This document shows, in pieces, positions 11,196 through 56,345 of a stretch of DNA of 64,000 bases. Numbering within the stretch: the first letter of the stretch is position 1; every line of letters starts with the position of its first letter. Location: positions 13,144,001-13,208,000 of the forward strand of contig CM075989.1 of NCBI GenBank assembly GCA_038087875.1, in the 5' to 3' direction. Both the position numbers and the translations under genes were made by a program. Under the pieces are notes generated by a model that was given only the letters and a program-made list of their open reading frames with translations, made no database searches and was not told the DNA's origin. The stretch comes from Malacoraja senta. Its lineage: Eukaryota.

Positions 11196-12811
11196 CAGTG
11201 GCTTGCAAAAGTTTTCATACCCCTTGAACTTTTCCACATTTTGTCACGTTACAACCACAAACGTAAATGTATTTTATTGGGATTTTATGTGATAGACCAA
11301 CACAAAGTGGCACATAATTGTGAAGTGGAAGGAAAATGATATATGGTTTTCAAATTTTTTTACAAATAAAAAACTGAAAAGTGTGGCGTGCAAAAGTATT
11401 CAGCCCCCCTGAGTCAATACTTTGTAGAACCACCTTTCGCTGCAATTACAGCTGCAAGTCTTTTGGGGTATGTCTCTACCAGCTTTGCACATCTAGAGAC
11501 TGAAATTTTTGCCCATTCTTCTTTGCAAAATAGCTCAAGCTCAGTCAGATTGGATGGAGAGCGTCTGTGAACAGCAATTTTCAAGTCTTGCCAGAGATTC
11601 TCAATTGGATTTAGGTCTGGACTTTGACTGGGCCATTCTAACACATGAATATGCTTTGATCTAAACCATTCCATTGTAGCTCTGGCTGTATGTTTAGGGT
11701 CGTTGTCCTGCTGGAAGGTGAACCTCCGCCCCAGTCTCAAGTCTTTTGCAGACTCTAACAGGTTTTCTTCCAAGATTGCCCTGTATTTGGCTCCATCCAT
11801 CTTCCCATCAACTCTGACCAGCTTCCCTGTCCCTGCTGAAAAAAAGCATCCCCACAGCATGATGCTGCCACCACCATGTTTCACAGTGGGGATGGTGTGT
11901 TCAGGGTGATGTGCAGTGTTAGGTTTCCGCCACACATAGCGTTTTGCATTTAGGCCCAAAACTTCAATTTTGGTCTCATCTGACCAGAGCACCTTCCTCC
12001 ACATGTTTGCTGTGTCCCCCACATGGCTTGTGGCAAACTGCAAACGGGACTTCTTATGGCTTTTTTTCAACAATGGCTTTCTTCTTGCCACTCTTCCATA
12101 AAGGCCCGATTTGTGGAGTGCACGACTAATAGTTGTCCTGTGGACAGATTCTCCCACCTGAGCTGTGGATCTCTGCAGCTCCTCCAGAGTTACCATGGGC
12201 CTCTTGGCTGCTTCTCTGATCAATGCTCTCCTTGCCCGGCCTGTCAGTTTAGGTGGACGGCCATGTCTTGGTAGGTTTGCAGTTGTGCCATACTCTTTCC
12301 ATATTCGGATGATGGATTGAACAGTGCTCCGTGAGATGTTCAAAGCTTGGGATTTTTTTTATAACCTAACCCTGCTTTAAACTTCTCCACAACTTTATCC
12401 CTGACCTGTCTGGTGTGTTCCTTGGGCTTCATGGTGCTGTTTGTTCACTAATGTTCTCTAACAAACCTCTGAGGCCTTCACAGAACAGCTGTATTTATAC
12501 TGAGATTAGATTACACACAAGTGGACTCTATTTACTAATTAGGTGACTTCTGAAGGCAATTGGTTGCACTGGATTTTATTTAGGGGTATCAGAGTAAAGG
12601 GGGCTGAATACTTTTGCACGCCACACTTTTCAGTTTTTTATTTGTAAAAAAATTTGAAAACCATGTATCATTTTCCTTCCACTTCACAATTATGCACCAC
12701 TTTGTGTTGGTCTATCACATAAAATCCCAATAAAATACATTTACGTTTGTGGTTGTAACGTGACAAAATGTGGAAAAGTTCAAGGGGTAAGAATACTTTT
12801 GCAAGCCACTG
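11196..12811 (-). mobile_element. Tc1/mariner IR-DR transposon (Passport-like), full length
   Basis: TA TSD; ~213-bp TIRs (11196-11408 and 12599-12811) starting CAGTGGCTTGCAAAAGT, each with an inner direct repeat; encloses a DD34E transposase; in the last intron of SPPL2A. Confidence 0.96.
11414..12432 (-). pseudogene. Tc1 DD34E transposase, ~339 aa with a single 1-nt frameshift near the N terminus
   Basis: ATG at 12432 gives MKPKEHTRQVRDKVVEKFKAGLGYKK, frame shifts in an A8 run (12353-12360), then ORF 11414..12343 with GRPPK, WSDETK, QQDNDPKH and SPDLNPIE (34 residues between D and E). Confidence 0.92.
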
Positions 12812-21200: not shown

Positions 21201-22165
21201 TAGAGTGCAGGCCTTATTGGTATGGGTTGATGAATTGTGGTTTGTGAAAGTTGTCATTTGGTATCAGTTGGAGATGGTGTGAGCTAACATAAGTTAGTGA
21301 ATGAATGCTTGGTATGAGCTGATAGGAGATCTGATTTGGTATGATTGGTATGAGGTTGTGCTCATGATGAGAGCTGATGCCAAGCAGTGTTTTGGGTTGA
21401 GGTCACAATACAGACATTGGAACAAATTGACTGGATATTAACAGTGAAAACAGAGGAAAAGGCTTCGGATCGATTGTCTTCCTCTAAGCACACCCTCTAT
21501 TTTCTACATGGTAGATTAACCTTTTTGATATCCTGGATTTCAACCCTTCATTGGCAGGCTAATAGAAAATAGGTGATTTCTAAAGAAAATGTCTTCAATA
21601 ATTAACACAAGAACTTAAAAATGAAAATATGCAGACCAGTTAATATGAGAATGAATCTTTATTCAGATTTCAACATATTTATCAATGTGTGACTTAACAA
21701 CTCTTTGTCATGGTTGCTAATCCAACATTTACATTTCCAAGATGTGTTTTCACTTTACTGGTGCCTAACAAGAATGTTTTGCAAAACAAAGGTCTAGGGG
21801 TTTGGAGAAGCAGCAGGGAAAGGAAAACAAACTGTTTTAATTATATATTATCAAAAGACATAATTGTGTGCAACATATTGAAGCACCAGTGCATGGAGGA
21901 TAGACAGCTCCTTGTTTATTTAATTGCTGTGATCAGACTTTGTCAGGGCGTTGTTCCAGACAGACTGCATTCATTCCTGACCGCTCTGCTGTGAGATCAA
22001 ATGCCCGAATAAGAACACAATCCAGAGTCCAAGGGACAGAAAATGGTGAACTCAAACTTGTGGCAAGTTTCTTTTTCTTTGGTGAGAAAATATTTATCAC
22101 TAACATTAACTTATGATGACTCTTCATCAAAGCCTGCCATGTCTCACTGCCTGTCATCAAAGCAG

Positions 22166-22990
22166 ATATTAACGATTTAGATGAAGGAATTAAATGTAAC
22201 ATCTCCAAATTTGTGGATGACACAAAGGTGGGTGGCACTGAGCTGCGAGGAGGATGCTATGAAGCTGCAGGGTGACGGCTAGGTTGGCTGAGTGGGCAGA
22301 TCCATGGCAGATGCAATATGATGTGGATAAATGTGAGGTTATCCGCTTTAGTGGCGAGAATAAGAAGGCAGATTATTATCTGAATGTTGTCAAATTTGGA
22401 AAAGGGGAGGTGCAATGAGACCTGGGTGTCCTTGTACATCAGTCACTGAAATTATGTATTCGGGTACAGCAGGCAGTGAAGAAAGCAAATGGCATGTTTG
22501 CCTTCATAGCGAGAGGATTTGAGTATAGGAGCAAGTAGGTCCTACAGTGGGTGTACTGGGCCCTGGTGAGACCACGCCTGGAGTATTGTGTACAGTTTTG
22601 GTATCCTAATTTGAGGATGGACATTCTTGCTATTGCGGGACTGCGGCGCAGGTTCACCAGGATGGCGGGACTGACATATGATGAAAGAATGGATCGACTG
22701 GTCTTATATTCACTGGAATTTAGAAGGGTGAGAGGGGATCTTATAGATACATATGAAATTATTAAGGGATTGGACAGGCTAGATGCAGGATTTTTTTTTC
22801 CAATGTTGGGGGAGGCCAGAACCAGGGGTCACAGTTTAAGAATAAGGGGTAGGTCATTTAGGATTGAGATGAGGAAAAATGTTTTCACACATAGAGTTAC
22901 GAATCTGTGGAATTCTCTGCCACAGAAGGCAGTGGAGGCCAATTCACTGTATAGGCCGAATGGCCTATTCCTGCACCTATTTTCTATGCC
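22166..22990 (+). mobile_element. CR1 (HER1-like) LINE, 5'-truncated RT 3' end
   Basis: INDL...KF(V)DDTK, LVRPRLEYCVQFW, SLEFRRVRGDLI, RTRGHSL, FFTHRV motifs; ggccgaatggcct tail. Confidence 0.9.
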
Positions 22991-23484
22991 TATATTTCTA
23001 TGTACAATTAGTAGGAATGTTACAACATTTTGAGATTTTAAAAATCAAGCCTGTAATTTATCCCATCAGATAAAGCATGAAAAGAACTTTAATTTGCTAC
23101 CTAATTCACTTTCATATATTCAGTATTAAAAAAGTTATGGTCATTTTCATACTCAGAAATTAGCATCTAGTTCCCTATTGCTTTTCCATTGACGTTCCCT
23201 ATTGCTTTTCCATTGACTTAACACAAAAGCTGTGATCGAGGATAGTCAAAAGCCCATAACTTTCTTAAAAATTAAGAGAACTGAATGAAATTTTCAGTTA
23301 TTATCGATTGAAGCATTCTGAAACAAATATGAAACATCTTACTTGGATGACCTGAAATTAAAGCATATAATTAGTTAGCTAATTACAAAATTGACCGTTG
23401 TGACGGAAATAGTAATAACACCGAGACTGCCTTGAAAATTCAAAAATGTGATGTTCTCAAGATCAGAACTTTAATATTATTGTA

Positions 23485-23859
23485 TTATATGCTGTAAGTC
23501 CATAACAGACAGGGAAAGAAATTACAATTTCTAGCAAAAGACCATAAGTCTTTATGGAGAAGATCAGTTGCTAGCTGGTACATTGGCATATCATAATCAG
23601 TAGCATCATCATGCTCTTCAGATTGTAACCAATAAGCAACTCTGTACACCTTGTTTTTCCTCAACTTTTCAATTTTGGCATTGTAAACCACAAGTTTTTG
23701 CTCTTCAAACTGCGCATGACATGCCTTTCTGCCCACTACTTTCTCATTAAGAATGTCCTGTAGATCATCACATTTGGAGTAGTCCAAATTCGGATAATCT
23801 CTGCGAATGCTGTCTAAATCAGTCTCTTTTGCTGGGCATTTGGATTGACAATTTTGCAT
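23485..23859 (-). pseudogene. Transposon-borne ORF remnant with Spindlin-like Tudor domain
   Basis: VVGRKACH...YRVAYW...MYQLATDLLHKDL resembles the recalled Spin/Ssty repeat pattern (IGKAVEH...FYITY...MYQLLDDYKEGDL). Confidence 0.5.
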
Positions 23860-24770
23860 TTCTTCTTCGGAGACATATGTTTAAAATGTAAAGCAAAAAA
23901 AAAAAACACTGAACAGCATTGACACAAACAAGTTATTATTTGCAGTTTTAGGAAAAAAAGGTAGAAATGCTAAAGTTAAACGCTAAAACAAATAGTAAAT
24001 ACCCAGCAAAAAAAATCATATTCATCAGTTTCATCAAATAAATTAAATTCATCTAATCTATTAAATTCATCTAAATTCAATTACTGGATCTAAACATCTA
24101 TTCATTTCTTAACAAAAGGCTAAATTTTTTAAATAGCCTAAGTATCCAAATAACAAACTGCTCCCATTCACACAATAATTCACTATATAACATGATTTTT
24201 AAATCTCACTTTGTCCTGAATTTATATGCCAAATTTCACTCAAGATAATCAAAGTAATTATTTTTTGCACAATACATCTGACTAAAACTGTACTGTGGAT
24301 ATTTAGTATGGAAATATTGATCATGGATAGACAATAACACAAAATATGGATGATTTAGATGTTCTTATGACATTGTGCATTGATTATCTTGAGAGTGGAT
24401 GTTTCTGGAATGTGATCGATTGGAATGTTGCTGTTGCCATAAATTTTAAGCCCATATTGGCAGGCAAGACACGGCCGATTCGTATGGGGCATAAATAACA
24501 TTTTTGCATCATAAGATTATAATGAAGCCACACCAAAAAGCAAGGTAATATGTTAAATAAACGATATACCTTTTGTTTTGTCCTGATATTGCGATCCGTG
24601 ATGTTGAAGGCGTTAGAAGTCGCATTTTACTTCAATCAAGCGATTAAATCGTCCAGCAATTTTTTTAAAAATAAACCGGGAACGGATGTGCGAACGATTT
24701 TTCTTCATCAGCTGGCAGCCCGAGGAAATCCCTCTCAGACAACCAATACAAACCTGCATTTTAATCCCGT

Positions 24771-24828
24771 CCACCCCTCCACCCCTCCACCCCTCCACCC
24801 CTCCACCCCTCCACCCCTCCACCCCTCC
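24771..24828. repeat. (CCACCCCT)7 tandem repeat
   Basis: Perfect 8-bp unit x7; GGGG tracts on the minus strand. Confidence 0.95.
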
Positions 24829-24829
24829 G

Positions 24830-25580
24830 GAGTCGCACGCACCGACAGTGACAGATCTACAGCGCCGCTAATGGTAGGTTTTGTAACGACGCCACAATTA
24901 GCATTCTACCTACGCTTGGACTGCCGGCCCCGCCCGCTTTACCGCCGCAGTCCAAGCACGTGCCACGGAGGGCGGAGACTGACTCACGCACGCAACGCTC
25001 CGCCCAGGGCAGCGGTCACGTGTGAACGCTGCCTCTCCGGCTCCACCCATCTCCACGCGACTGTCACATGACGGCTGTTGGCGGCCGCGGTGCTCGAGCG
25101 TCAGTCGGAGACTCTCCATTATGAAAGCGGTGGCTGCCGCGGGCCTGGCACTCTGCACCACCCGGGACTCTCCCGCGCTGTCTGCCCTCACACCACGTCG
25201 ATGGCTCAGTGCCACGTGGAGCCACTGCTGCAGCCTCCTCACCCGTGAAGAGAATGGTAGGTGGCTCGGGGTGCGTCAATTGCTGGGCCATTCGACCTGG
25301 CCGCGTGGTGAGGCCTGCTGTGCACCGGGCGTAGGCCCGTCGGCGGGGACACGCTGTGCGCTTGAGCTGTATCGGCCGCTGCAACTGCCGGTAACGGTGG
25401 CCGCGGTACCGTGGGGTAGGCCTGGCTTGGTGCCTGGTCTGGGCCTACACTGACTCGGAGGCCGCGGCTCGGGTGCCGAACCTGCCAGTGAATGTCGATC
25501 AGTAACCATGACGCCTGCTGATCTAGTCGCTCAATGCTGTTTGGAGTGCCTGTGGTTGACAGCGCTAGTGCGCCGAGGCC
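24830..25580 (+). promoter_or_regulatory. TRPM7: CpG island / TRPM7 promoter and exon 1
   Basis: High GC and CpG density with GC boxes (ccccgcccg, gggcgg) around the ATG|gt first exon. Confidence 0.8.
25254..25256 (+). CDS. TRPM7: TRPM7 exon 1 coding part (initiator ATG only)
   Basis: gaagagaATG|gtaggt in the CpG island; phase 0 joins exon 2 to give MSQKSWIE; mammalian TRPM7 exon 1 also contributes only the ATG. Confidence 0.75.
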
Positions 25581-26460
25581 CGTAATCTTAGAGCATTTTG
25601 AAATCAAAATAACACGAGGTCATAATCACTTTCATTTAATAAGACCGACATTTAATCGGTTATCCTGCATGGTTTCCCTTCAACGCTCAAAAAAAAGTAT
25701 TTCGTCACCTTATATAGCCCCCCCCCCCCCCTTTCGTTATTTTGCAGATAAGGAGGTTCTAAAACGTCTTTAAATTCCACTTCATCAGTCTGAAGTGTTT
25801 CTTCCCATATTCTGTGTCTGTGTCTCTGGCTTGATCTCCCACCGAAGGAAATATCCCCTTTGAATCTTCCCTTCTCAGTATCTTCTGTTTTAATGAGATG
25901 ACTTATCTGGGGGCACATGCATGAATTTATTCCTTTTCACCCCACCACCAAAGTGCTTTAGTTTAAATTGATACTGTTTACACTTGTGTAATTAATGTGT
26001 GTTTCTTGTCATTCCTTGTCCTACTCAGTGAGTGGTCCTGATCTGAAACTTCAGTCCATTACATGCTGAGTTCCTTCAACATTTTGTATTTTGTAGTGCA
26101 TGCTGCTACTTGTCATTCTTTTAAACTTAATAGTATTGCTCGTTAGGTTTAATATTTTCTTATGACAGACCCATTCTTTCGTGATTAGTCTTGTGAACCT
26201 TTGCTGCGCTATTAAAATAAGGTAACTATAGGGAGGTTGCACGCAGTTGAGGTCGTGACCCGTAAGAGCCTGTCCCATTGGGGGTCGCGCGTGTCATCAT
26301 GCGTGCGCACCGCCGTCTGGAGCGGGTGACGTCATTTGAAGATAGACACAAAATCCAGGAGTAACTCAGCGGGACCAGCTGCATCTCTGGAGAGAAGGAA
26401 TGGATGATCTTTCGGGTCAAGACGTCTCGACCCGAAACGTCATCCATTGCTTTCCAGAGA

Positions 26461-26560
26461 TTAATAATAATAATAATACATTTTATTTATGGGCGCCTTT
26501 CACAAAGTCTCAAGGACACCTTACAAAGTTTAACAAATAGTGTAGAAACATGTAAGCGGA
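26461..26560 (-). mobile_element. L2-type LINE/SINE 3' tail
   Basis: Minus strand gtgtccttgag...gaaaggcgcccataaataaaatg(tat)n. Confidence 0.5.
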
Positions 26561-26853
26561 ATGAAATAAATAGCAAAGACATCACCAGTACACAAATTAA
26601 AGATAGAATTAAATCCAAAAACAAAAATCAAAAACACAATATGGAAGAGATTACTCCAGAGAAACGTCATCCTTCTCTACAGAGATTACTCCAGCATTTT
26701 GTGTCTATCTCCAATCGTCTTGGCCCCGCTCTGGGAGTAGGAGTGGGGGCGGATCTGGATCCGCAACGGCCGTAAGCCCCAGGCCGAGCTCGGCGATCGT
26801 TTGCCTGCTTCAGCTGCTGTTGGAGGTGAGACGTTGCGCCGCGCCAGGGTCTT

Positions 26854-27020
26854 GGGCCTGTCCCACTTTGGCCGTCAGTTACGCGACAGGCCGGTGGAAG
26901 ATTTCGTGCAGGACGAAGTCCACGCCACTCCACACCACTCCATGCGCCCATCTCGCGCTACCCACACGCTAGCAGGTCGAGTAAATGGCACGCGAATGAC
27001 AGCCAAGTGGGACAGGCCCT
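26854..27020. mobile_element. Harbinger-type MITE nested in the ISL2EU-like element
   Basis: TIRs GGGCCTGTCCCACTT...AAGTGGGACAGGCCC. Confidence 0.75.
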
Positions 27021-27764
27021 GTACTGTTGCCTCGCAATGCCAACTGGAGTACACGCGATGAACTGCAGGTAAGCATTTACTATGGCTGCCAGCACAGCGG
27101 GCCCTTCTGGCCCAGCATCCGGACTGGTTGCACACTTGCAGACCCCGGGCCATCTATCCCTGCGGTCGGGGGGGGGGGGGGGGAAGAAGGAGTTCGGGGT
27201 GCCGGTGCAGCGTGATCAGTGACTCTGGGTGGGGTGGGCGGAGGGAGCAGACCATCCCTAACTCTGCTGCAGCTGACGTTGCCTGGAGCCGCGGCCCCGC
27301 TCCACTGGCCCCGTGTGTGGGCGCTGCCGACCCACAGCCAGTGACAGTGCGGCCCATAGGGGGAGACGGGACGGAGGGCGGCCATGGCCGGACAGCGCTG
27401 TCTCCGGGGGGGGGGGGGGGAGAGAGAGGGAGCTGTCCCGAGGGATGCGTTCCTTCTGCCGCTTACACCTCGGGTTCAGAGCAAAGGTACTAGAGCATTT
27501 GGTTCAGAGCGCTCAGTCACCCAAAAAAAGATAACCCCACGATATTGCAATCGAGTTACTCTGAGTTTGAGTTTGCTTTATATAGCGAAGGCTTATTGAA
27601 ATGGTGCTGTCTGAACACGACAATGAATGCGGCTATTAGTCGCGGATTGTAAAAGACGCTACACCATGAGATAACACATGTTTAAACCTTATCCCTTCCC
27701 GCTTTCATTGACAGCACCCACAATTATTTGCAGCACAGAAATTGACCATTTTGGCGTTTTTTAA

Positions 27765-28201
27765 ATTTTTTTTATGGATATTTTTAGTAGAAGCAAAAAC
27801 ATATTATGGTAAAAACATTTCATGTATATCAATCATACATTATTAATATTTGTATTGTGGATTGATTCTGCTTCTAGTTTTTTTTTATAGATAGAAAGTA
27901 AGAAAGAGAGAGAGAAAACCCCCCACAAATGTCAAGATTTAAAAAAAAGTGGAATGATTTACTAATAATACATCATTGGAGATAGGTTCGTAGGTTATAA
28001 AGTATAACTTTTCATCTAATCCTAAGTTCAAGCTTCAGTTAGGTTCCCGTGCCGAACCGATCTACCCCTTCAAATAGTCAGTGAATGGAGACCATATTCT
28101 AACAAAAAGTTCTTGTTTGTCCATTAAGACAAATCTGATTCTTTCGAGGTGTAGGGTCTCCGACATTTCCAAAATCCACATTTTAATTGTGGGGCTTATA
28201 G
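27765..28201 (-). mobile_element. 5'-truncated L1-clade LINE (ORF2 C terminus plus 3' UTR)
   Basis: PTIKMWILEMSETLHLERIRF...FVRIWSPFTDYL typical of fish L1 ORF2 ends; TSD ggcg(t/g)tttttaa at 27753-27764 and 28202-28213; the unduplicated site is seen in the 53-kb copy. Confidence 0.7.
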
Positions 28202-28539
28202 GGCGGTTTTTAACAGGTAAGAAAGTACGCGTTTCGTGTGTTAACTGTGTATGCCGAGGCAGCCATATCTTCCACATGGATTGAGCTGCTCCGTGCATCA
28301 CACCCTTTGACCCGATGACCTTACGTGCAACCCCCCCTATAGAGCTGTTTTCTCACTAAACCTCTACAGTTGGAGCAAGCGTTTTGTATTCCATCTCCCT
28401 TTCAATAAAAGTCATTGCTCATTTGTCTTCTATTTAGCTGCATGTGCATGGTAATTTTGTTTCTTGTACGTACACATGGCTCTCACTTTGAACACGGTCA
28501 TTTAGTAGTTTGAAAACATCTAAATTATCCTGAATTAGT

Positions 28540-28632
28540 CTGAAAAAGGGTTTCGGCCCGAAACGTTGCCTATTTCCTTCGCTCCATAGATGCTGCCGCA
28601 CCCGCTGAGTTTCTCCAGCACTTTTGTCTACA
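28540..28632 (+). mobile_element. Penelope-derived short repeat
   Basis: ctgaaaaagggtttcggcccgaaacgttgcc...ctccagcacttttgtctac. Confidence 0.65.
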
Positions 28633-28724
28633 TTAAATGATCCTCTTGCTCTTTCCTACCAAAATGATTGTTACATATTTCCCCTATATTATCAGCTTCA
28701 TCGGCTAAATCTTTAGACCGTTTA

Positions 28725-29640
28725 GAGCATGAAAAAACCCTCGGCCCAACTTGCCCACACCGACTAACATGTCACATCTACACTAGTCCCATCTGCTTGC
28801 GTTTGGCCCATATTTCTCTAAACCTCTCACTCTACCTGTCTAAATCTTTCTTAAACATTGAGATAATAATAAACTTGTGTACCTGAGATAATAATAATGT
28901 TGTGATAGTACCTGTATCAACTACCTCCTCCAACAGCCCGTGCCTTACAACCAACCACCCTTTATGTGAAAAAGTTACTCCTGAGGTTCCTATTAAATCT
29001 TTCCCCCTTCACCTTAAACCTATGTCCTCTGGTTCTCGATTCCTCTACTCTGGGCAAGAGAATGAGTGTGTCTACGAAAATCTATTCCTCTTATGATTTG
29101 TACACGTCCATAAGATCACCCCTCATTCTCCTGCACGCAACGAATAGAGTCCCAGCCTGCTCAACCTCTCCCTAAGCTCAGGCCCTTGAGTCCTGGCAAC
29201 ATCTGTGCAAATCTTTGCACCCTTTCCAGCTTGACAACATCTATCCTATAACATGGTGTCTGAAACATAACACAATAAATACCCTAGCGTCACTAGCGTT
29301 TTATATAATTGCAACATGATCTCCCAATTTCTACACTCAATACTCTGACTGATAAATACCAATGTGCCAATAGCCTTTTTGACCATCCTATCTAATTGTG
29401 ACGCCATCTTCAAGGAACTATGTATGTGCACTCCTAGATCCCTCTGTTCTATAACACTCCCCAGAGCTCTTGTCATTCACTGTGGAGGTCTTGCCCATGT
29501 TAGTCTTCCCAAAATGCAACTCCTTACATTTCTTTGTATTAAATTCCAACAGCCTTTTCTCTGCCCAACCGATCAAGATCCTCCTGCAATTTTGACAACC
29601 ACCTTCACTATCTACAATACCACTCACTTTAGTGTCAACA
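28725..29640 (-). mobile_element. CR1 LINE 3' fragment
   Basis: EFNTKKCKELHFGK, EQRDLGVHIHSSLK motifs; reverse complement of the 43088 copy. Confidence 0.85.
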
Positions 29641-32600
29641 TTTACTTGAACATAAATGAAAGTAGGCCATTTATAACTTTTGAGCCTGCTCTGCCATTCA
29701 TTAAGATTATGGGTGACCTTGTACCTCAGCAGCATTTTCCTGCACTCTCCCTCGATTCTCGTATTTAGATATCGACTGATTTTGGTTTTGAATGAACACA
29801 ATTGCTAAGCTTCTACAGCCCCTGGGTAGAAAATTGCAATGGTTCATCGCCTTCTGTGAAGAGATTTCTCTTCTCAGCCCTAACTGACCTTTAGTCTGTG
29901 TATGGGAACTCCGGTTCTTCATTGCTTAGATCTCAAACATCCTGTAAGAAATATGTTTCAATTTGATTACTTGTTATTATAAACTCCAGAGATTGCAGGC
30001 CTGGTTCATGTAATCTCATACTGCAAATCTTCAATTTTTTGGGAACAGTCTTGTGAATCTTTGCTGCATTCCCTTTGTGGCAGATATACTGTTTTGGGTA
30101 AGAAAACCTTGCTAAGACTACTCCAGGATGTGGTCTTAGCAAGGCCTTATGTAATTACAGTAATACACCTTCAATCAAATACTCGGGTAACATGCCATTT
30201 GGTTGTCGTGATCTTTGCATATGGACACTATAGACCCTTCGGGCATCTACCAACCCAGTTTCCATTTAAAAGAAATGGCACGTTTGTTTTAATTTGTGCA
30301 TCAAAGTAGATAGCTTCACATTTTTCCATGTTGCTTTTGCCTTATTTTTGCTCAGCTTTTATATATCCCCTAAAGCCTGTCTATATCTTCTTACTGGTCA
30401 CAATCCTAGCCAGTTTATTGTTATAAGCAAATTTAGAAACACAATATTTGTTTTCTTCAGATAAATTCTTGATACAGTTCATGAGTGGTTTTAGCCGAAC
30501 TACCTCCCTGCAGTACCACCCCAGTGACAAACTGCAAAACTGACAAAAAAGGATCTGTTTATTCATACTACTTCCTGATTGATCACCATATCTCAATCTT
30601 GTCAGGATATTACCCCCAGTTCTACTCCAAGCCCAGCAAGCAACCTCACATGGGACATTGTTGACAGCCTATCATTGTAGTGCTTTCAATACATTTTCCC
30701 AATAGATCATGGCCAACTCTTCTTTTAACTTTCCATAGTATAATTTGATTGCACTGAAGACCTTATCTTCAGATTCAATTACACTTTCAAACTCTATAAA
30801 ATTATATTGTTGTATGGTCACTCTCTTTCATGAAGGCTCCTTTAAAACAAGATTCTCAATTAACTCTTCCTTGTTGCACAAAATGACTATTCCCCTAATT
30901 GTTACTTTGACATATTGAAATACATTTTCTCTCCCTCATTTCTTGTGGTGTTATATTTACTTCTTTTGTAATCTGTTGATAGCTGCCCTGAATTAAGAGA
31001 ATCTTGATAGTGTAGTACTATAGCATCCACTACACTTATAATCATGTATTTTAGAACCCTGGGATAGAGACGGGTCTGGAGATTTATCAGGCCTTAATCC
31101 TGTTTTCTTAGAAGCTATCTCTTGAGCGGATAGCAGTTAGAAGCTTCTTATACTCTCTTGACCTGTGTCTTCTGTGTGCTTTTGGGCAGGTATAACATAT
31201 ATCATGTCAATACCATTTTTATTTGCATTCCATTGTAAATTCTAGTGCCTTGGTTTCCAAGGGATCAAAGATTAATTTTGATATGTACTTTTACTTGCGT
31301 GTAGAAGCTTTAATGCTCTGGGGCATGTGATCATCGTGCTTTGGGCATGTCATGATTTTTTATGTTTTCCATGCTTTTGAGATCTGAATTCATGTGGATT
31401 TTGCCTGTCATCTCACCTACTCTTGACGTCTTACTCCCACATCAGTTCCTTATCAATGTTTCATAAATTAACCTGATGTTCTAGAAAATTATGTCACAAT
31501 CTCTACACCAAACTGTCAGCACTCTGTCATCCTGAAGCAGTCAAATTCCCTAAATAATGTGAATGCAACTTTTCTCTTGGCATTCTCTGAAATGAGTGAA
31601 TCATTGCTTCCTTTTGAAGATTCCACTGAAAGTTTCACTCAGTCTGGTATGCCTTCAAGTTTAGAGGATTATTGGTGATTTAACTTGATGAAGGAATTCT
31701 GTCAGCTAAAGGGAAACTTTAATCTGGTCCACAACAAGATTAAATTGTTTTCTTAAAATTAGAATCAGATTATTTTGAATTAACTTATTCCAAAAACAAT
31801 ATGCTGAGTTTACTTGGAAGTTATGGACTGGCAGCTTTGCTGATGTATTCAGAGGGTATGGAAGAAACAAGTTAAATAAAACAGAGTTACATCTCATCTA
31901 TGATAATGTATGTTGTAATGGACTTTAATGGCTTGCTCCATTTCTTAATTTCTATTTTTCAATCTGACCTTCCTAATTATTGCACTTACTGGATTAATTT
32001 AAGATAACCTCTGCTGTCATCCGCGAGAATCTGATCATCAATTATACCTTTCACTATTTTCTCCCTCCAAAATATAGATTTCAATAGATTTGTATTAACA
32101 ATATGACTGACTGAAACCTGGCTAGAAAATGGCATCATCATCTGGATATTCTTTTCATGGGTTCTATTTAAACTATTGGTCTAGTGAGCTTGCCCTTATT
32201 AAATAATAATTTGATCTCTTTCCCAATGTTTCTGTAACTTCTTGAATGCTTGTTTGAACACTCCACCCCTCAAGAGTTTGTATTCACTTCTCTCCCACCA
32301 GGCCAATATTGCTCAAAGACTTTCTATCTCTATCACTTTACTGATGGAATTGATGTTATCATTTCAGTCTCCCAACTCGAGTAAGATTGCATTCTGTTAT
32401 AATTTGGTTGGCCTCGATTAAAGTTTATCTGCACAGGAAAAGTAAATACAGTATTAATCTGTTATTTGCGGACTTTGGTGCTGGATTATCAGGTTTTCCA
32501 TGCAGTTGATGTTACTTCTATTAACAGCCCAATATAAATTTAGTTTCACTTTTTAAACAAATGTTAGGTAGGAGTTCAAAATGTTTTCCAGTAAGCCAAA

Positions 32601-51378: not shown

Positions 51379-51458
51379 TCCCAAAAATCCTGGATAGAGA
51401 ATACCTTTACCAAGAGAGAATGTGTTTATATAATTCCAAGCTCAAAAGACCCACACAG
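51379..51458 (+). CDS. TRPM7: TRPM7 exon 2 ([27 protein letters not shown])
   Basis: tttatag|TCC...CACAG|gtaaag; 80 nt; near-identical to the TRPM7 N terminus [28 protein letters not shown] and closer to it than to TRPM6; follows SPPL2A in the same orientation as in mammals. Confidence 0.95.
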
Positions 51459-56145: not shown

Positions 56146-56345
56146 NNNNNNNNNNNNNNNNNNNNNNNNNNNNNNNNNNNNNNNNNNNNNNNNNNNNNNN
56201 NNNNNNNNNNNNNNNNNNNNNNNNNNNNNNNNNNNNNNNNNNNNNNNNNNNNNNNNNNNNNNNNNNNNNNNNNNNNNNNNNNNNNNNNNNNNNNNNNNNN
56301 NNNNNNNNNNNNNNNNNNNNNNNNNNNNNNNNNNNNNNNNNNNNN
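56146..56345. other. Assembly gap (exactly 200 N)
   Basis: Round-number N run, typical of a scaffolding join of unknown size. Confidence 0.99.

What the first reader, a model, noticed from the sequence alone, without database searches (positions are those of the whole stretch)
25068..25256. Three-uORF leader of TRPM7, including a CDS-overlapping uORF and an ATGA stop/start junction
Seen: uORF-a 25068-25124 (MTAVGGRGARASVGDSPL*) ends with a TGA that overlaps the ATG of uORF-b (ATGA, 25121-25124). uORF-b (MKAVAAAGLAL...) is out of frame with the CDS, reads past the main ATG and, after splicing, stays open through all of exon 2 (V-PKILDREYLYQERMCLYNSKLKRPTQ). uORF-c 25201-25248 (MAQCHVEPLLQPPHP*) stops 5 nt before the main ATG. 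Known (recalled): mammalian TRPM7 translation is tuned by uORFs in a Mg2+-sensitive way. Inference: uORF control of this Mg2+ channel-kinase may date to the jawed-vertebrate ancestor, here with an added stop/start-coupled uORF.
Basis: partly seen in the sequence, partly recalled or inferred. Interest (0 to 1): 0.7.

Follow-up and report, generated by a model that had tools for sequence, protein, structure and literature searches.

The report
Known TRPM7 leader uORFs, skate copy
The three upstream start codons are really there, but two of them are the already published, vertebrate-wide pair of upstream reading frames that tune TRPM7 translation to magnesium. The third is an unproven extra whose "stop/start junction" is a by-product of the conserved sequence around the next start codon.

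Summary

**The gene.** 25254 ATG|GTAGGT is the end of TRPM7 exon 1. It joins exon 2 (51379-51458) to give [27 protein letters not shown], which is 24/26 identical to solved mouse and human TRPM7.

**uORF-b and uORF-c are known.** They are the orthologues of uORF1 and uORF2 of Nikonorova et al. 2014 (PMC4227784):
- same start contexts (A-3/A+4 for uAUG1, U-3/G+4 for uAUG2);
- same three-frame layout;
- uORF2 stop exactly 5 nt before the main AUG;
- near-identical blocks (ATTATGAAAG; CCCGTGARGAGAATG), each unique in the 64 kb.

That paper already calls the pair conserved "among all vertebrates" and shows its Mg2+ dependence, so this part is a new instance of a known device.

**uORF-a (25068-25124) is the only possible addition.**
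- It has a weak context (C-3) and is absent from mouse.
- Its ATGA junction follows from the conserved A at +4 of uAUG1. About 20% of shuffled upstream segments give such a uORF.
- Three uATGs is not more than chance (P 0.3-0.45).
- Short blocks shared with the 5' end of the mouse mRNA (25015-25041) suggest, but do not prove, that 25068 is transcribed.
- No orthologous shark or ray DNA could be reached, so conservation of uORF-a is untested.

The parts
25015..25041 (+). Promoter-proximal or leader 5' block: E-box GTCACGTG (25015-25022), GCTGCC (25028-25033), TCTCCGGC (25034-25041). The order matches the first ~45 nt of the mouse TRPM7 mRNA leader. It marks the probable orthologous position of the TSS (~25005, inferred).
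   Evidence: GTCACGTG and TCTCCGGC each occur once on the + strand of the 64 kb window. Mouse leader sequence: supplement 2 of PMC4227784.
25068..25124 (+). uORF-a: 18 codons in a weak start context (CAC AUG A). It is in frame with the main AUG but closed by the TGA that overlaps uAUG1. It has no counterpart in the mouse leader.
   Evidence: PMC4227784 states that the mouse leader has exactly two uAUGs.
25121..25256 (+). Exon-1 part of uORF-b, which is TRPM7 uORF1. Strong context AUU AUG A (A-3, A+4), frame +1. It overlaps the main AUG, stays open through exon 2 and ends beyond the window.
   Evidence: (ATTATGAAAG unique in the window, identical to mouse); paper.
25201..25248 (+). uORF-c, which is TRPM7 uORF2 (the Mg2+-sensitive one). 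Weak context UCG AUG G (U-3, G+4), 15 codons, last sense codon CCG (Pro), stop UGA 5 nt before the main AUG.
   Evidence: CCGTGARGAGAATGGT unique, expected 0.02; paper.
25254..25256 (+). Main TRPM7 start codon and last three bases of exon 1, followed by the donor GTAGGT (25257-25262).
   Evidence: The paper states that the whole leader plus the start codon lie in exon 1.
51379..51458 (+). TRPM7 exon 2 (80 nt), codons 2-27 plus 2 nt: [26 protein letters not shown].
   Evidence: (24/26 identical to residues 2-27 of solved mouse and human TRPM7, E 4e-11; TRPM3 and TRPM1 score lower).

Best explanation
The region 25005-25256 is the CpG-island first exon of TRPM7 in what other notes call a skate. 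It carries the canonical vertebrate TRPM7 translational control leader.

Proposed mechanism, by analogy with the mouse experiments:
1. Scanning 40S subunits mostly start at uAUG1 (25121, strong A-3/A+4 context).
2. They then translate uORF1 out of frame across the main AUG into exons 2 and 3, which shuts off TRPM7 synthesis.
3. Subunits that leak past reach uAUG2 (25201, weak U-3/G+4 context). It is used more at high Mg2+ and less at low Mg2+.
4. uORF2 ends 5 nt before the main AUG, so some reinitiation is possible.
5. The net result is low TRPM7 synthesis that rises when Mg2+ falls.

The sequence homology is shown here. The Mg2+ response is inferred from mouse.

The extra uATG-a (25068) is most likely a lineage-specific, weak-context upstream AUG with little or no designed role. 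Its stop overlaps uAUG1 only because the conserved uAUG1 context is AUGA. If it is translated, terminating ribosomes would lack a ternary complex at uAUG1. They would tend to skip it and reinitiate further down, slightly relieving uORF1 repression.
For: - Gene identity: exon 2 peptide is 24/26 identical to residues 2-27 of TRPM7 structures.
- Exon 1 ends in ATG|GTAGGT, and the splice gives MSQKSW....
- Published architecture (PMC4227784): two uAUGs out of frame with each other and with the CDS; uAUG1 A-3/A+4 and overlapping the CDS; uAUG2 U-3/G+4; uORF2 stop 5 nt before the AUG, with a spacer 'almost identical in all vertebrates'; leader GC 67.5%.
- The window matches every item. Contexts are AUUAUGA and UCGAUGG. 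Frames are -133 (mod 3 = 1) and -53 (mod 3 = 2), against mouse -184 and -68 with the same residues. The spacer is AGAGA against mouse GGAGA. GC is 0.66.
- Blocks taken from the mouse construct sequence occur once each in 64 kb, in the right order and strand: ATTATGAAAG (expected 0.22) and CCGTGARGAGAATGGT (expected 0.02).
- uORF-a as a by-product: 19-20% of shuffled upstream segments give a uORF ending on the fixed AUGA, and it has C at -3.
Against: - There are no transcript data, so the TSS is only inferred from blocks shared with the mouse mRNA 5' end.
- No other cartilaginous-fish sequence could be fetched, so uATG-a could be conserved and functional.
- Mg2+ dependence has been measured only for the mouse leader.
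- The species shown in the paper's Figure 1B are not readable in the held text. Whether a chondrichthyan was included is unknown.
Confidence: 0.85

Rival explanations
1. Three-uORF variant. uORF-a is a selected addition in cartilaginous fishes. Its termination on the AUGA either feeds ribosomes directly into uAUG1 (stop/start coupling, more repression) or carries them past uAUG1 to reinitiate at uAUG2 or the main AUG (less repression). Either way it adds a further control layer. Because its context is weak, its use should rise with Mg2+.
For: - uATG-a lies 27 nt downstream of the block homologous to the 5' end of the mouse mRNA (25015-25041), so it is plausibly in the leader.
- It is short (18 codons), which favours resumed scanning (review PMC10275272).
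- The exact ATGA overlap is real.
Against: - The junction is expected in about 20% of random upstream segments, given the conserved AUGA.
- It has a pyrimidine at -3.
- Mouse and human have only two uAUGs.
- Read: no UGGGA (TURBS motif 1) lies in the 80 nt upstream.
- For uORF-type reinitiation the new start lies downstream of the stop and efficiency rises with distance, so direct coupling into uAUG1 is unlikely.
- The leader fold is no more stable than shuffles (z -0.13).
Confidence: 0.12
2. Alternative or longer first exon. Transcription starts upstream of 24871, where a second AATGGTAGGT (ATG 24871|GTAGGT) could splice to exon 2 and give the same protein with a uORF-free leader. If that donor is not used, the ATG opens a 66-codon uORF whose TGA (25069-25071) overlaps uATG-a.
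For:: ATG|GTAGGT at 24871 lies inside the CpG island, and the 10-mer is identical to the one at 25252-25261; the ORF from 24871 ends at 25071, overlapping 25068.
Against: - The GC boxes (24927-24935, 24961-24966, 25001-25006) and the E-box (25015) lie downstream of 24871, as a proximal promoter would (read).
- Homology with the mouse leader starts only at about 25015.
- Another first-reader note (unchecked) places 23011-24900 in a transposon.
- No conserved block surrounds 24871.
Confidence: 0.05
3. None of the uATGs matter. They are chance ATGs in a GC-rich island, and the transcripts start just before 25254.
For: The number of ATGs equals the chance expectation. There are no transcript data.
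Against: Position-, frame- and context-exact agreement with the experimentally characterised mouse leader. The two diagnostic blocks are unique in 64 kb. A stop exactly 5 nt before the AUG has P of about 0.005.
Confidence: 0.03

Closest known systems
TRPM7 5'-leader uORF1/uORF2 Mg2+-sensing module (Nikonorova, Kornakov, Dmitriev, Vassilenko, Ryazanov, Nucleic Acids Res 2014; PMC4227784)
   Same: - Same gene.
- Leader plus AUG lie in exon 1.
- uAUG1 has A-3/A+4 and its uORF overlaps the CDS out of frame.
- uAUG2 has U-3/G+4.
- The UGA of uORF2 lies 5 nt before the main AUG.
- The three AUGs occupy three frames with the same frame residues as mouse.
- The leader is GC-rich.
- Blocks ATTATGAAAG and CCCGTGA(A/G)GAGAATG are shared.
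- uORF peptides are not conserved, beyond the first residues set by the start contexts and the final Pro.
   Different: - Distances are shorter: uAUG1 to AUG is 133 nt against 184 nt, and uORF2 is 48 nt against 63 nt.
- The spacer is AGAGA against GGAGA.
- An extra uATG lies 53 nt upstream of uAUG1, which mouse and human lack.
- Function has not been measured in this species.
ATF4/GCN4-type delayed reinitiation (a short permissive 5' uORF followed by an inhibitory uORF that overlaps the CDS; established knowledge: Vattem & Wek 2004, Hinnebusch)
   Same: uORF-a plus uORF1 would formally give a short 5' uORF ahead of an inhibitory CDS-overlapping uORF.
   Different: In ATF4 the two uORFs are separated by tens of nucleotides, so ternary-complex level decides which AUG is used. 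Here the stop overlaps the next AUG and leaves no tunable interval. In addition, uAUG-a is weak, whereas ATF4 uORF1 is used efficiently.
Overlapping stop/start termination-reinitiation (AUGA, UAAUG) of caliciviruses and influenza B with a TURBS element (review PMC10275272)
   Same: The AUGA stop/start overlap itself.
   Different: The viral cases follow long ORFs and need an upstream structured element with a UGGGA motif pairing to 18S rRNA. Here the ORF has 18 codons, no UGGGA lies upstream, and the fold is no more stable than shuffles.

Membership tests
TRPM7 two-uORF Mg2+-sensitive leader (PMC4227784) | The downstream gene is TRPM7 | tested here: met
The exon 2 peptide is 24/26 identical to residues 2-27 of mouse and human TRPM7 chains (E 4e-11). 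TRPM3 and TRPM1 score lower.
TRPM7 two-uORF Mg2+-sensitive leader (PMC4227784) | The whole leader and the start codon lie in exon 1 | tested here: met
   ATG 25254 is followed at once by GTAGGT. Exon 2 begins with codon 2, and the spliced product is MSQKSW....
TRPM7 two-uORF Mg2+-sensitive leader (PMC4227784) | uAUG1 sits in a strong context (A-3, A+4) and its uORF overlaps the main CDS out of frame | tested here: met
   AUUAUGA at 25118-25124, frame +1. The frame is open through exon 1 and all of exon 2. ATTATGAAAG is identical to mouse and unique in the window.
TRPM7 two-uORF Mg2+-sensitive leader (PMC4227784) | uAUG2 sits in a weak context (U-3, G+4) and heads a short uORF | tested here: met
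   UCGAUGG at 25198-25204, 15 codons.
TRPM7 two-uORF Mg2+-sensitive leader (PMC4227784) | The uORF2 stop lies exactly 5 nt upstream of the main AUG, with a near-invariant spacer | tested here: met
   TGA 25246-25248, AGAGA, ATG 25254. The mouse spacer is GGAGA. CCGTGARGAGAATGGT is unique in the window, expected 0.02. Chance of such a stop position is about 0.005.
TRPM7 two-uORF Mg2+-sensitive leader (PMC4227784) | The uAUGs are transcribed (TSS upstream of uAUG1) | not testable with these tools
   There is only an inference. GTCACGTG, GCTGCC and TCTCCGGC at 25015-25041 match the first ~45 nt of the mouse mRNA leader.
TRPM7 two-uORF Mg2+-sensitive leader (PMC4227784) | Translation of the main ORF rises as Mg2+ falls, depending on uAUG2 | not testable with these tools
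   This needs in vitro translation or reporter assays.
TURBS-type stop/start termination-reinitiation | An upstream element with a UGGGA motif complementary to 18S rRNA, following a long ORF | tested here: not met
   No TGGGA in 25040-25120 (read). uORF-a has 18 codons. Leader fold z = -0.13.
ATF4/GCN4-type delayed reinitiation | A scanning interval between the stop of the first uORF and the inhibitory uAUG, so that ternary-complex availability can decide bypass | tested here: not met
   The stop (25122-25124) overlaps the uAUG (25121-25123), so there is no interval.

The most novel reading that the evidence does not exclude
uORF-a is a conserved chondrichthyan addition to the TRPM7 leader. 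It would be a weak-context, Mg2+-favoured uAUG whose 18-codon frame ends on the AUGA of uAUG1. Ribosomes that translate it would be carried past the strongly repressive uORF1 and reinitiate downstream. That would add a third, opposing input to the two-uORF magnesium sensor in marine cartilaginous fishes.
Probability: 0.1. Interest if true: 0.5.

Novelty: new member of a known kind. Interest (0 to 1): 0.2.

Why it matters
The finding shows at sequence level that the published TRPM7 two-uORF magnesium sensor is present, block for block, in a cartilaginous fish. The shared parts are the start contexts, the frames, the 5-nt stop-to-start spacer and even the final Pro codon of uORF2. This fits the 2014 claim of vertebrate-wide conservation and places the device at least at the origin of jawed vertebrates. 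It opens no new question. The only open point is whether the extra upstream AUG is used, and that is a small, easily testable issue.

Tried and rejected
**Fetching orthologous leaders from other vertebrates failed.**
It returned a single contig, L001, with no other TRPM7 leader block around the match; by eye it looks like a bacterial chance hit.
- Exact look-up of six ORFs spanning exon 1 found none in the protein collection.
- An exhaustive phmmer search with the 143-aa ORF 25022-25450 gave 0 hits.
- Exons 3 onward are not in the window, so no TRPM7 query of at least 30 aa could be made.

**I did not align the mouse leader as a whole.** It has no reference id. The PDF-derived text also seems to have lost a few bases: I count 112 nt between the uAUGs against 116 implied by the paper's figures. 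I compared only short blocks.

**Rejected readings.**
- RNA structure as a component: MFE -100.1 kcal/mol against shuffles at -99.5, z = -0.13.
- Known RNA families in 22000-30000: none.
- Second GC-rich island (26650-27550) as an alternative TRPM7 first exon: its donor-adjacent ATG (27058) would join exon 2 out of frame.
- Alternative donor ATGGTAG|GT at 25261: this also shifts the frame.
- A neighbouring gene that might give access to syntenic loci: Pfam found only a Tc1/mariner transposase among ten large ORFs.

Full report
**1. The observation**

- ATG 25068 opens 18 codons (MTAVGGRGARASVGDSPL). They are closed by TGA 25122-25124, which shares its TG with ATG 25121.
- ATG 25121 is 133 nt upstream of ATG 25254 (frame +1) and has no stop before it.
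- ATG 25201 opens 15 codons (MAQCHVEPLLQPPHP), closed by TGA 25246-25248. Five bases (AGAGA) follow, then ATG 25254, then GTAGGT.

Exon 2 is 51379-51458 (ag|TCCCAAAAATCC...CACAG|gtaaag, 80 nt). The first intron is therefore 26 kb.
- Spliced, the main frame reads [27 protein letters not shown].
- The uORF-b frame reads ...TREENVPKILDREYLYQERMCLYNSKLKRPTQ without a stop.
- No further TRPM7 exon is in the window.

**2. Gene identity**

The 26 residues of exon 2 are 24/26 identical to residues 2-27 of solved mouse and human TRPM7 (E 4e-11). TRPM3 and TRPM1 come next, at E of about 3e-8. The region 24700-25600 is a CpG island with GC 0.60-0.67 and CpG observed/expected of 0.83-1.1.

**3. What it is**

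Nikonorova et al. 2014 (PMC4227784) describe the mouse TRPM7 leader as follows.
- It lies wholly in exon 1 together with the AUG.
- Its GC content is 67.5%.
- It has two uAUGs, out of frame with each other and with the CDS.
- uAUG1 has A-3/A+4 and heads a 390-nt uORF1 that overlaps the CDS by 206 nt.
- uAUG2 has U-3/G+4 and heads a 63-nt uORF2 that ends 5 nt before the main AUG.

The window matches each point.

| Feature | Window | Mouse |
|---|---|---|
| uAUG1 context | CC AUU AUG AAAG | CA AUU AUG AAAG |
| uAUG2 context | G UCG AUG GCU | A UAG AUG GCU |
| End of uORF2 | CCCGUGA-AGAGA-AUG | CCCGUGA-GGAGA-AUG |
| uAUG1 to main AUG | -133 (mod 3 = 1) | -184 (390 minus 206; mod 3 = 1) |
| uAUG2 to main AUG | -53 (mod 3 = 2) | -68 (mod 3 = 2) |

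The mouse-derived blocks each occur exactly once in the 64 kb, in the right order and on the + strand:
- ATTATGAAAG (expected 0.22);
- CCGTGARGAGAATGGT (expected 0.02 even with two mismatches allowed).

uORF-b is therefore uORF1, and uORF-c is uORF2.

The paper shows for mouse that:
- uAUG1 loss relieves repression at least 2-fold;
- uAUG2 loss shifts the Mg2+ optimum upward;
- uORF2 is translated better at high Mg2+;
- its stop codon contributes about 2-fold to main-ORF initiation.

[quoted passage not shown] Which species their Figure 1B shows cannot be read in the held text.

**4. Chance**

In dinucleotide shuffles of the putative leader:
- three or more ATGs arise in 29-45%;
- a CDS-overlapping uORF arises in about 55%;
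- an ATGA junction arises in 5-8%;
- a stop exactly 5 nt before the AUG arises in 0.4-0.8%.

The conserved uAUG1 context always reads AUGA, so the fair null keeps it fixed. Under that null, 19-20% of shuffled upstream segments contain an ATG whose frame ends on that TGA. The junction is a by-product of the conserved A at +4, not a separate design feature.

The same thing happens once more upstream. An ORF from ATG 24871 ends on TGA 25069-25071, inside the ATGA of uATG-a.

**5. Is uATG-a in the mRNA?**

There are no transcript data. The first ~45 nt of the mouse mRNA used in the paper read ...GTCACGTG GCTGCC ... TCTCCGGC.... The window has the same blocks in the same order:
- GTCACGTG at 25015 (the only + strand copy);
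- GCTGCC at 25028;
- TCTCCGGC at 25034 (the only + strand copy).

GC boxes lie just upstream at 24927, 24961 and 25001 (read). If the TSS position is conserved, it is near 25005. uATG-a would then be at about +64 and uAUG1 at about +117, against +101 in mouse. This is an inference.

uATG-a has C at -3 and A at +4, a weak context. Mouse has only two uAUGs, and a supplementary figure legend says the same of human.

**6. Mechanism**

*Shown by homology and inferred for function.* Most scanning subunits start at uAUG1 and are lost to the out-of-frame uORF1. Leaky scanners meet uAUG2, which is used more at high Mg2+. uORF2 ends 5 nt before the AUG, which allows some reinitiation. TRPM7 synthesis is low overall and rises as Mg2+ falls.

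*uORF-a, speculative.* Most subunits would scan past it. Those that translate it terminate with the P site 2 nt short of uAUG1 and without a ternary complex. For uORF-type reinitiation the new start lies downstream of the stop, and efficiency grows with distance (review PMC10275272). These subunits should therefore skip uAUG1 and reinitiate at uAUG2 (+77 nt) or the main AUG (+130 nt), a mild relief of uORF1 repression.

Direct stop/start coupling is known from viral TURBS systems after long ORFs. Here there is no UGGGA motif upstream, and the fold is no more stable than shuffles (z -0.13).

**7. What could not be done**

No orthologous vertebrate DNA was reachable. Conservation of uATG-a in other cartilaginous fishes, the decisive test, remains open. 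The taxon (skate) comes only from other agents' notes.

**8. Verdict**

- The core is an orthologous instance of an already published, experimentally characterised device that has been claimed for all vertebrates.
- The added uORF and its junction are not more than chance would give, and they are untested.
- Interest is low.

Noticed in passing
window 25243-25248: Conservation between mouse and this genome runs upstream of the uORF2 stop. Both read CCCGTGA, so the last sense codon of uORF2 is CCG (Pro) followed by UGA in both species. The paper stresses only the 5-nt spacer. A terminal Pro-UGA might slow termination right next to the main AUG.
   Followed up: no
window 24869-24878 and 25252-25261: The 10-mer AATGGTAGGT occurs twice, 383 nt apart. 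The upstream copy gives a second ATG|GTAGGT (ATG 24871) that could in principle splice in frame to exon 2. If it is not spliced, its 66-codon ORF ends on TGA 25069-25071, overlapping uATG-a in a second ATGA junction.
   Followed up: partly
window 25015-25041: E-box GTCACGTG, then GCTGCC and TCTCCGGC, in the same order as at the 5' end of the mouse TRPM7 mRNA. This is a candidate conserved core-promoter or TSS-proximal block. An AP-1-like TGACTCA at 24971 and GC boxes at 24927, 24961 and 25001 lie just upstream.
   Followed up: partly
window 24766-24828: A perfect-looking microsatellite, (CCCCTCCA) x 7.9 with 98% matches, sits directly upstream of the TRPM7 promoter at the 5' edge of the CpG island.
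   Followed up: no
window 26650-27550: A second GC-rich, CpG-rich island lies 1.4 kb into intron 1. It has G16 and G15 runs (27168-27183, 27406-27420) and a consensus-like donor CAG|GTAAGC at 27067-27075. There is no Pfam or Rfam match, and its ATG 27058 would join exon 2 out of frame. Its nature is unknown: an intronic promoter, a non-coding first exon or a repeat.
   Followed up: partly
window 11417-12343 (-): An intact-looking 309-aa Tc1/mariner transposase ORF (HTH_Tnp_Tc3_2 6e-25, DDE_3 8e-14) lies upstream of TRPM7.
   Followed up: no
window 23485-23859 (-): A 124-aa ATG-initiated ORF lies 1.2 kb upstream of the TRPM7 CpG island, on the opposite strand, with no Pfam match at E<=0.01. Another first-reader note calls this region a transposon with a Spindlin-like domain. 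That was not checked here.
   Followed up: no
window 56146-56345: A 200-N assembly gap lies in TRPM7 intron 2. It was left untouched.
   Followed up: no
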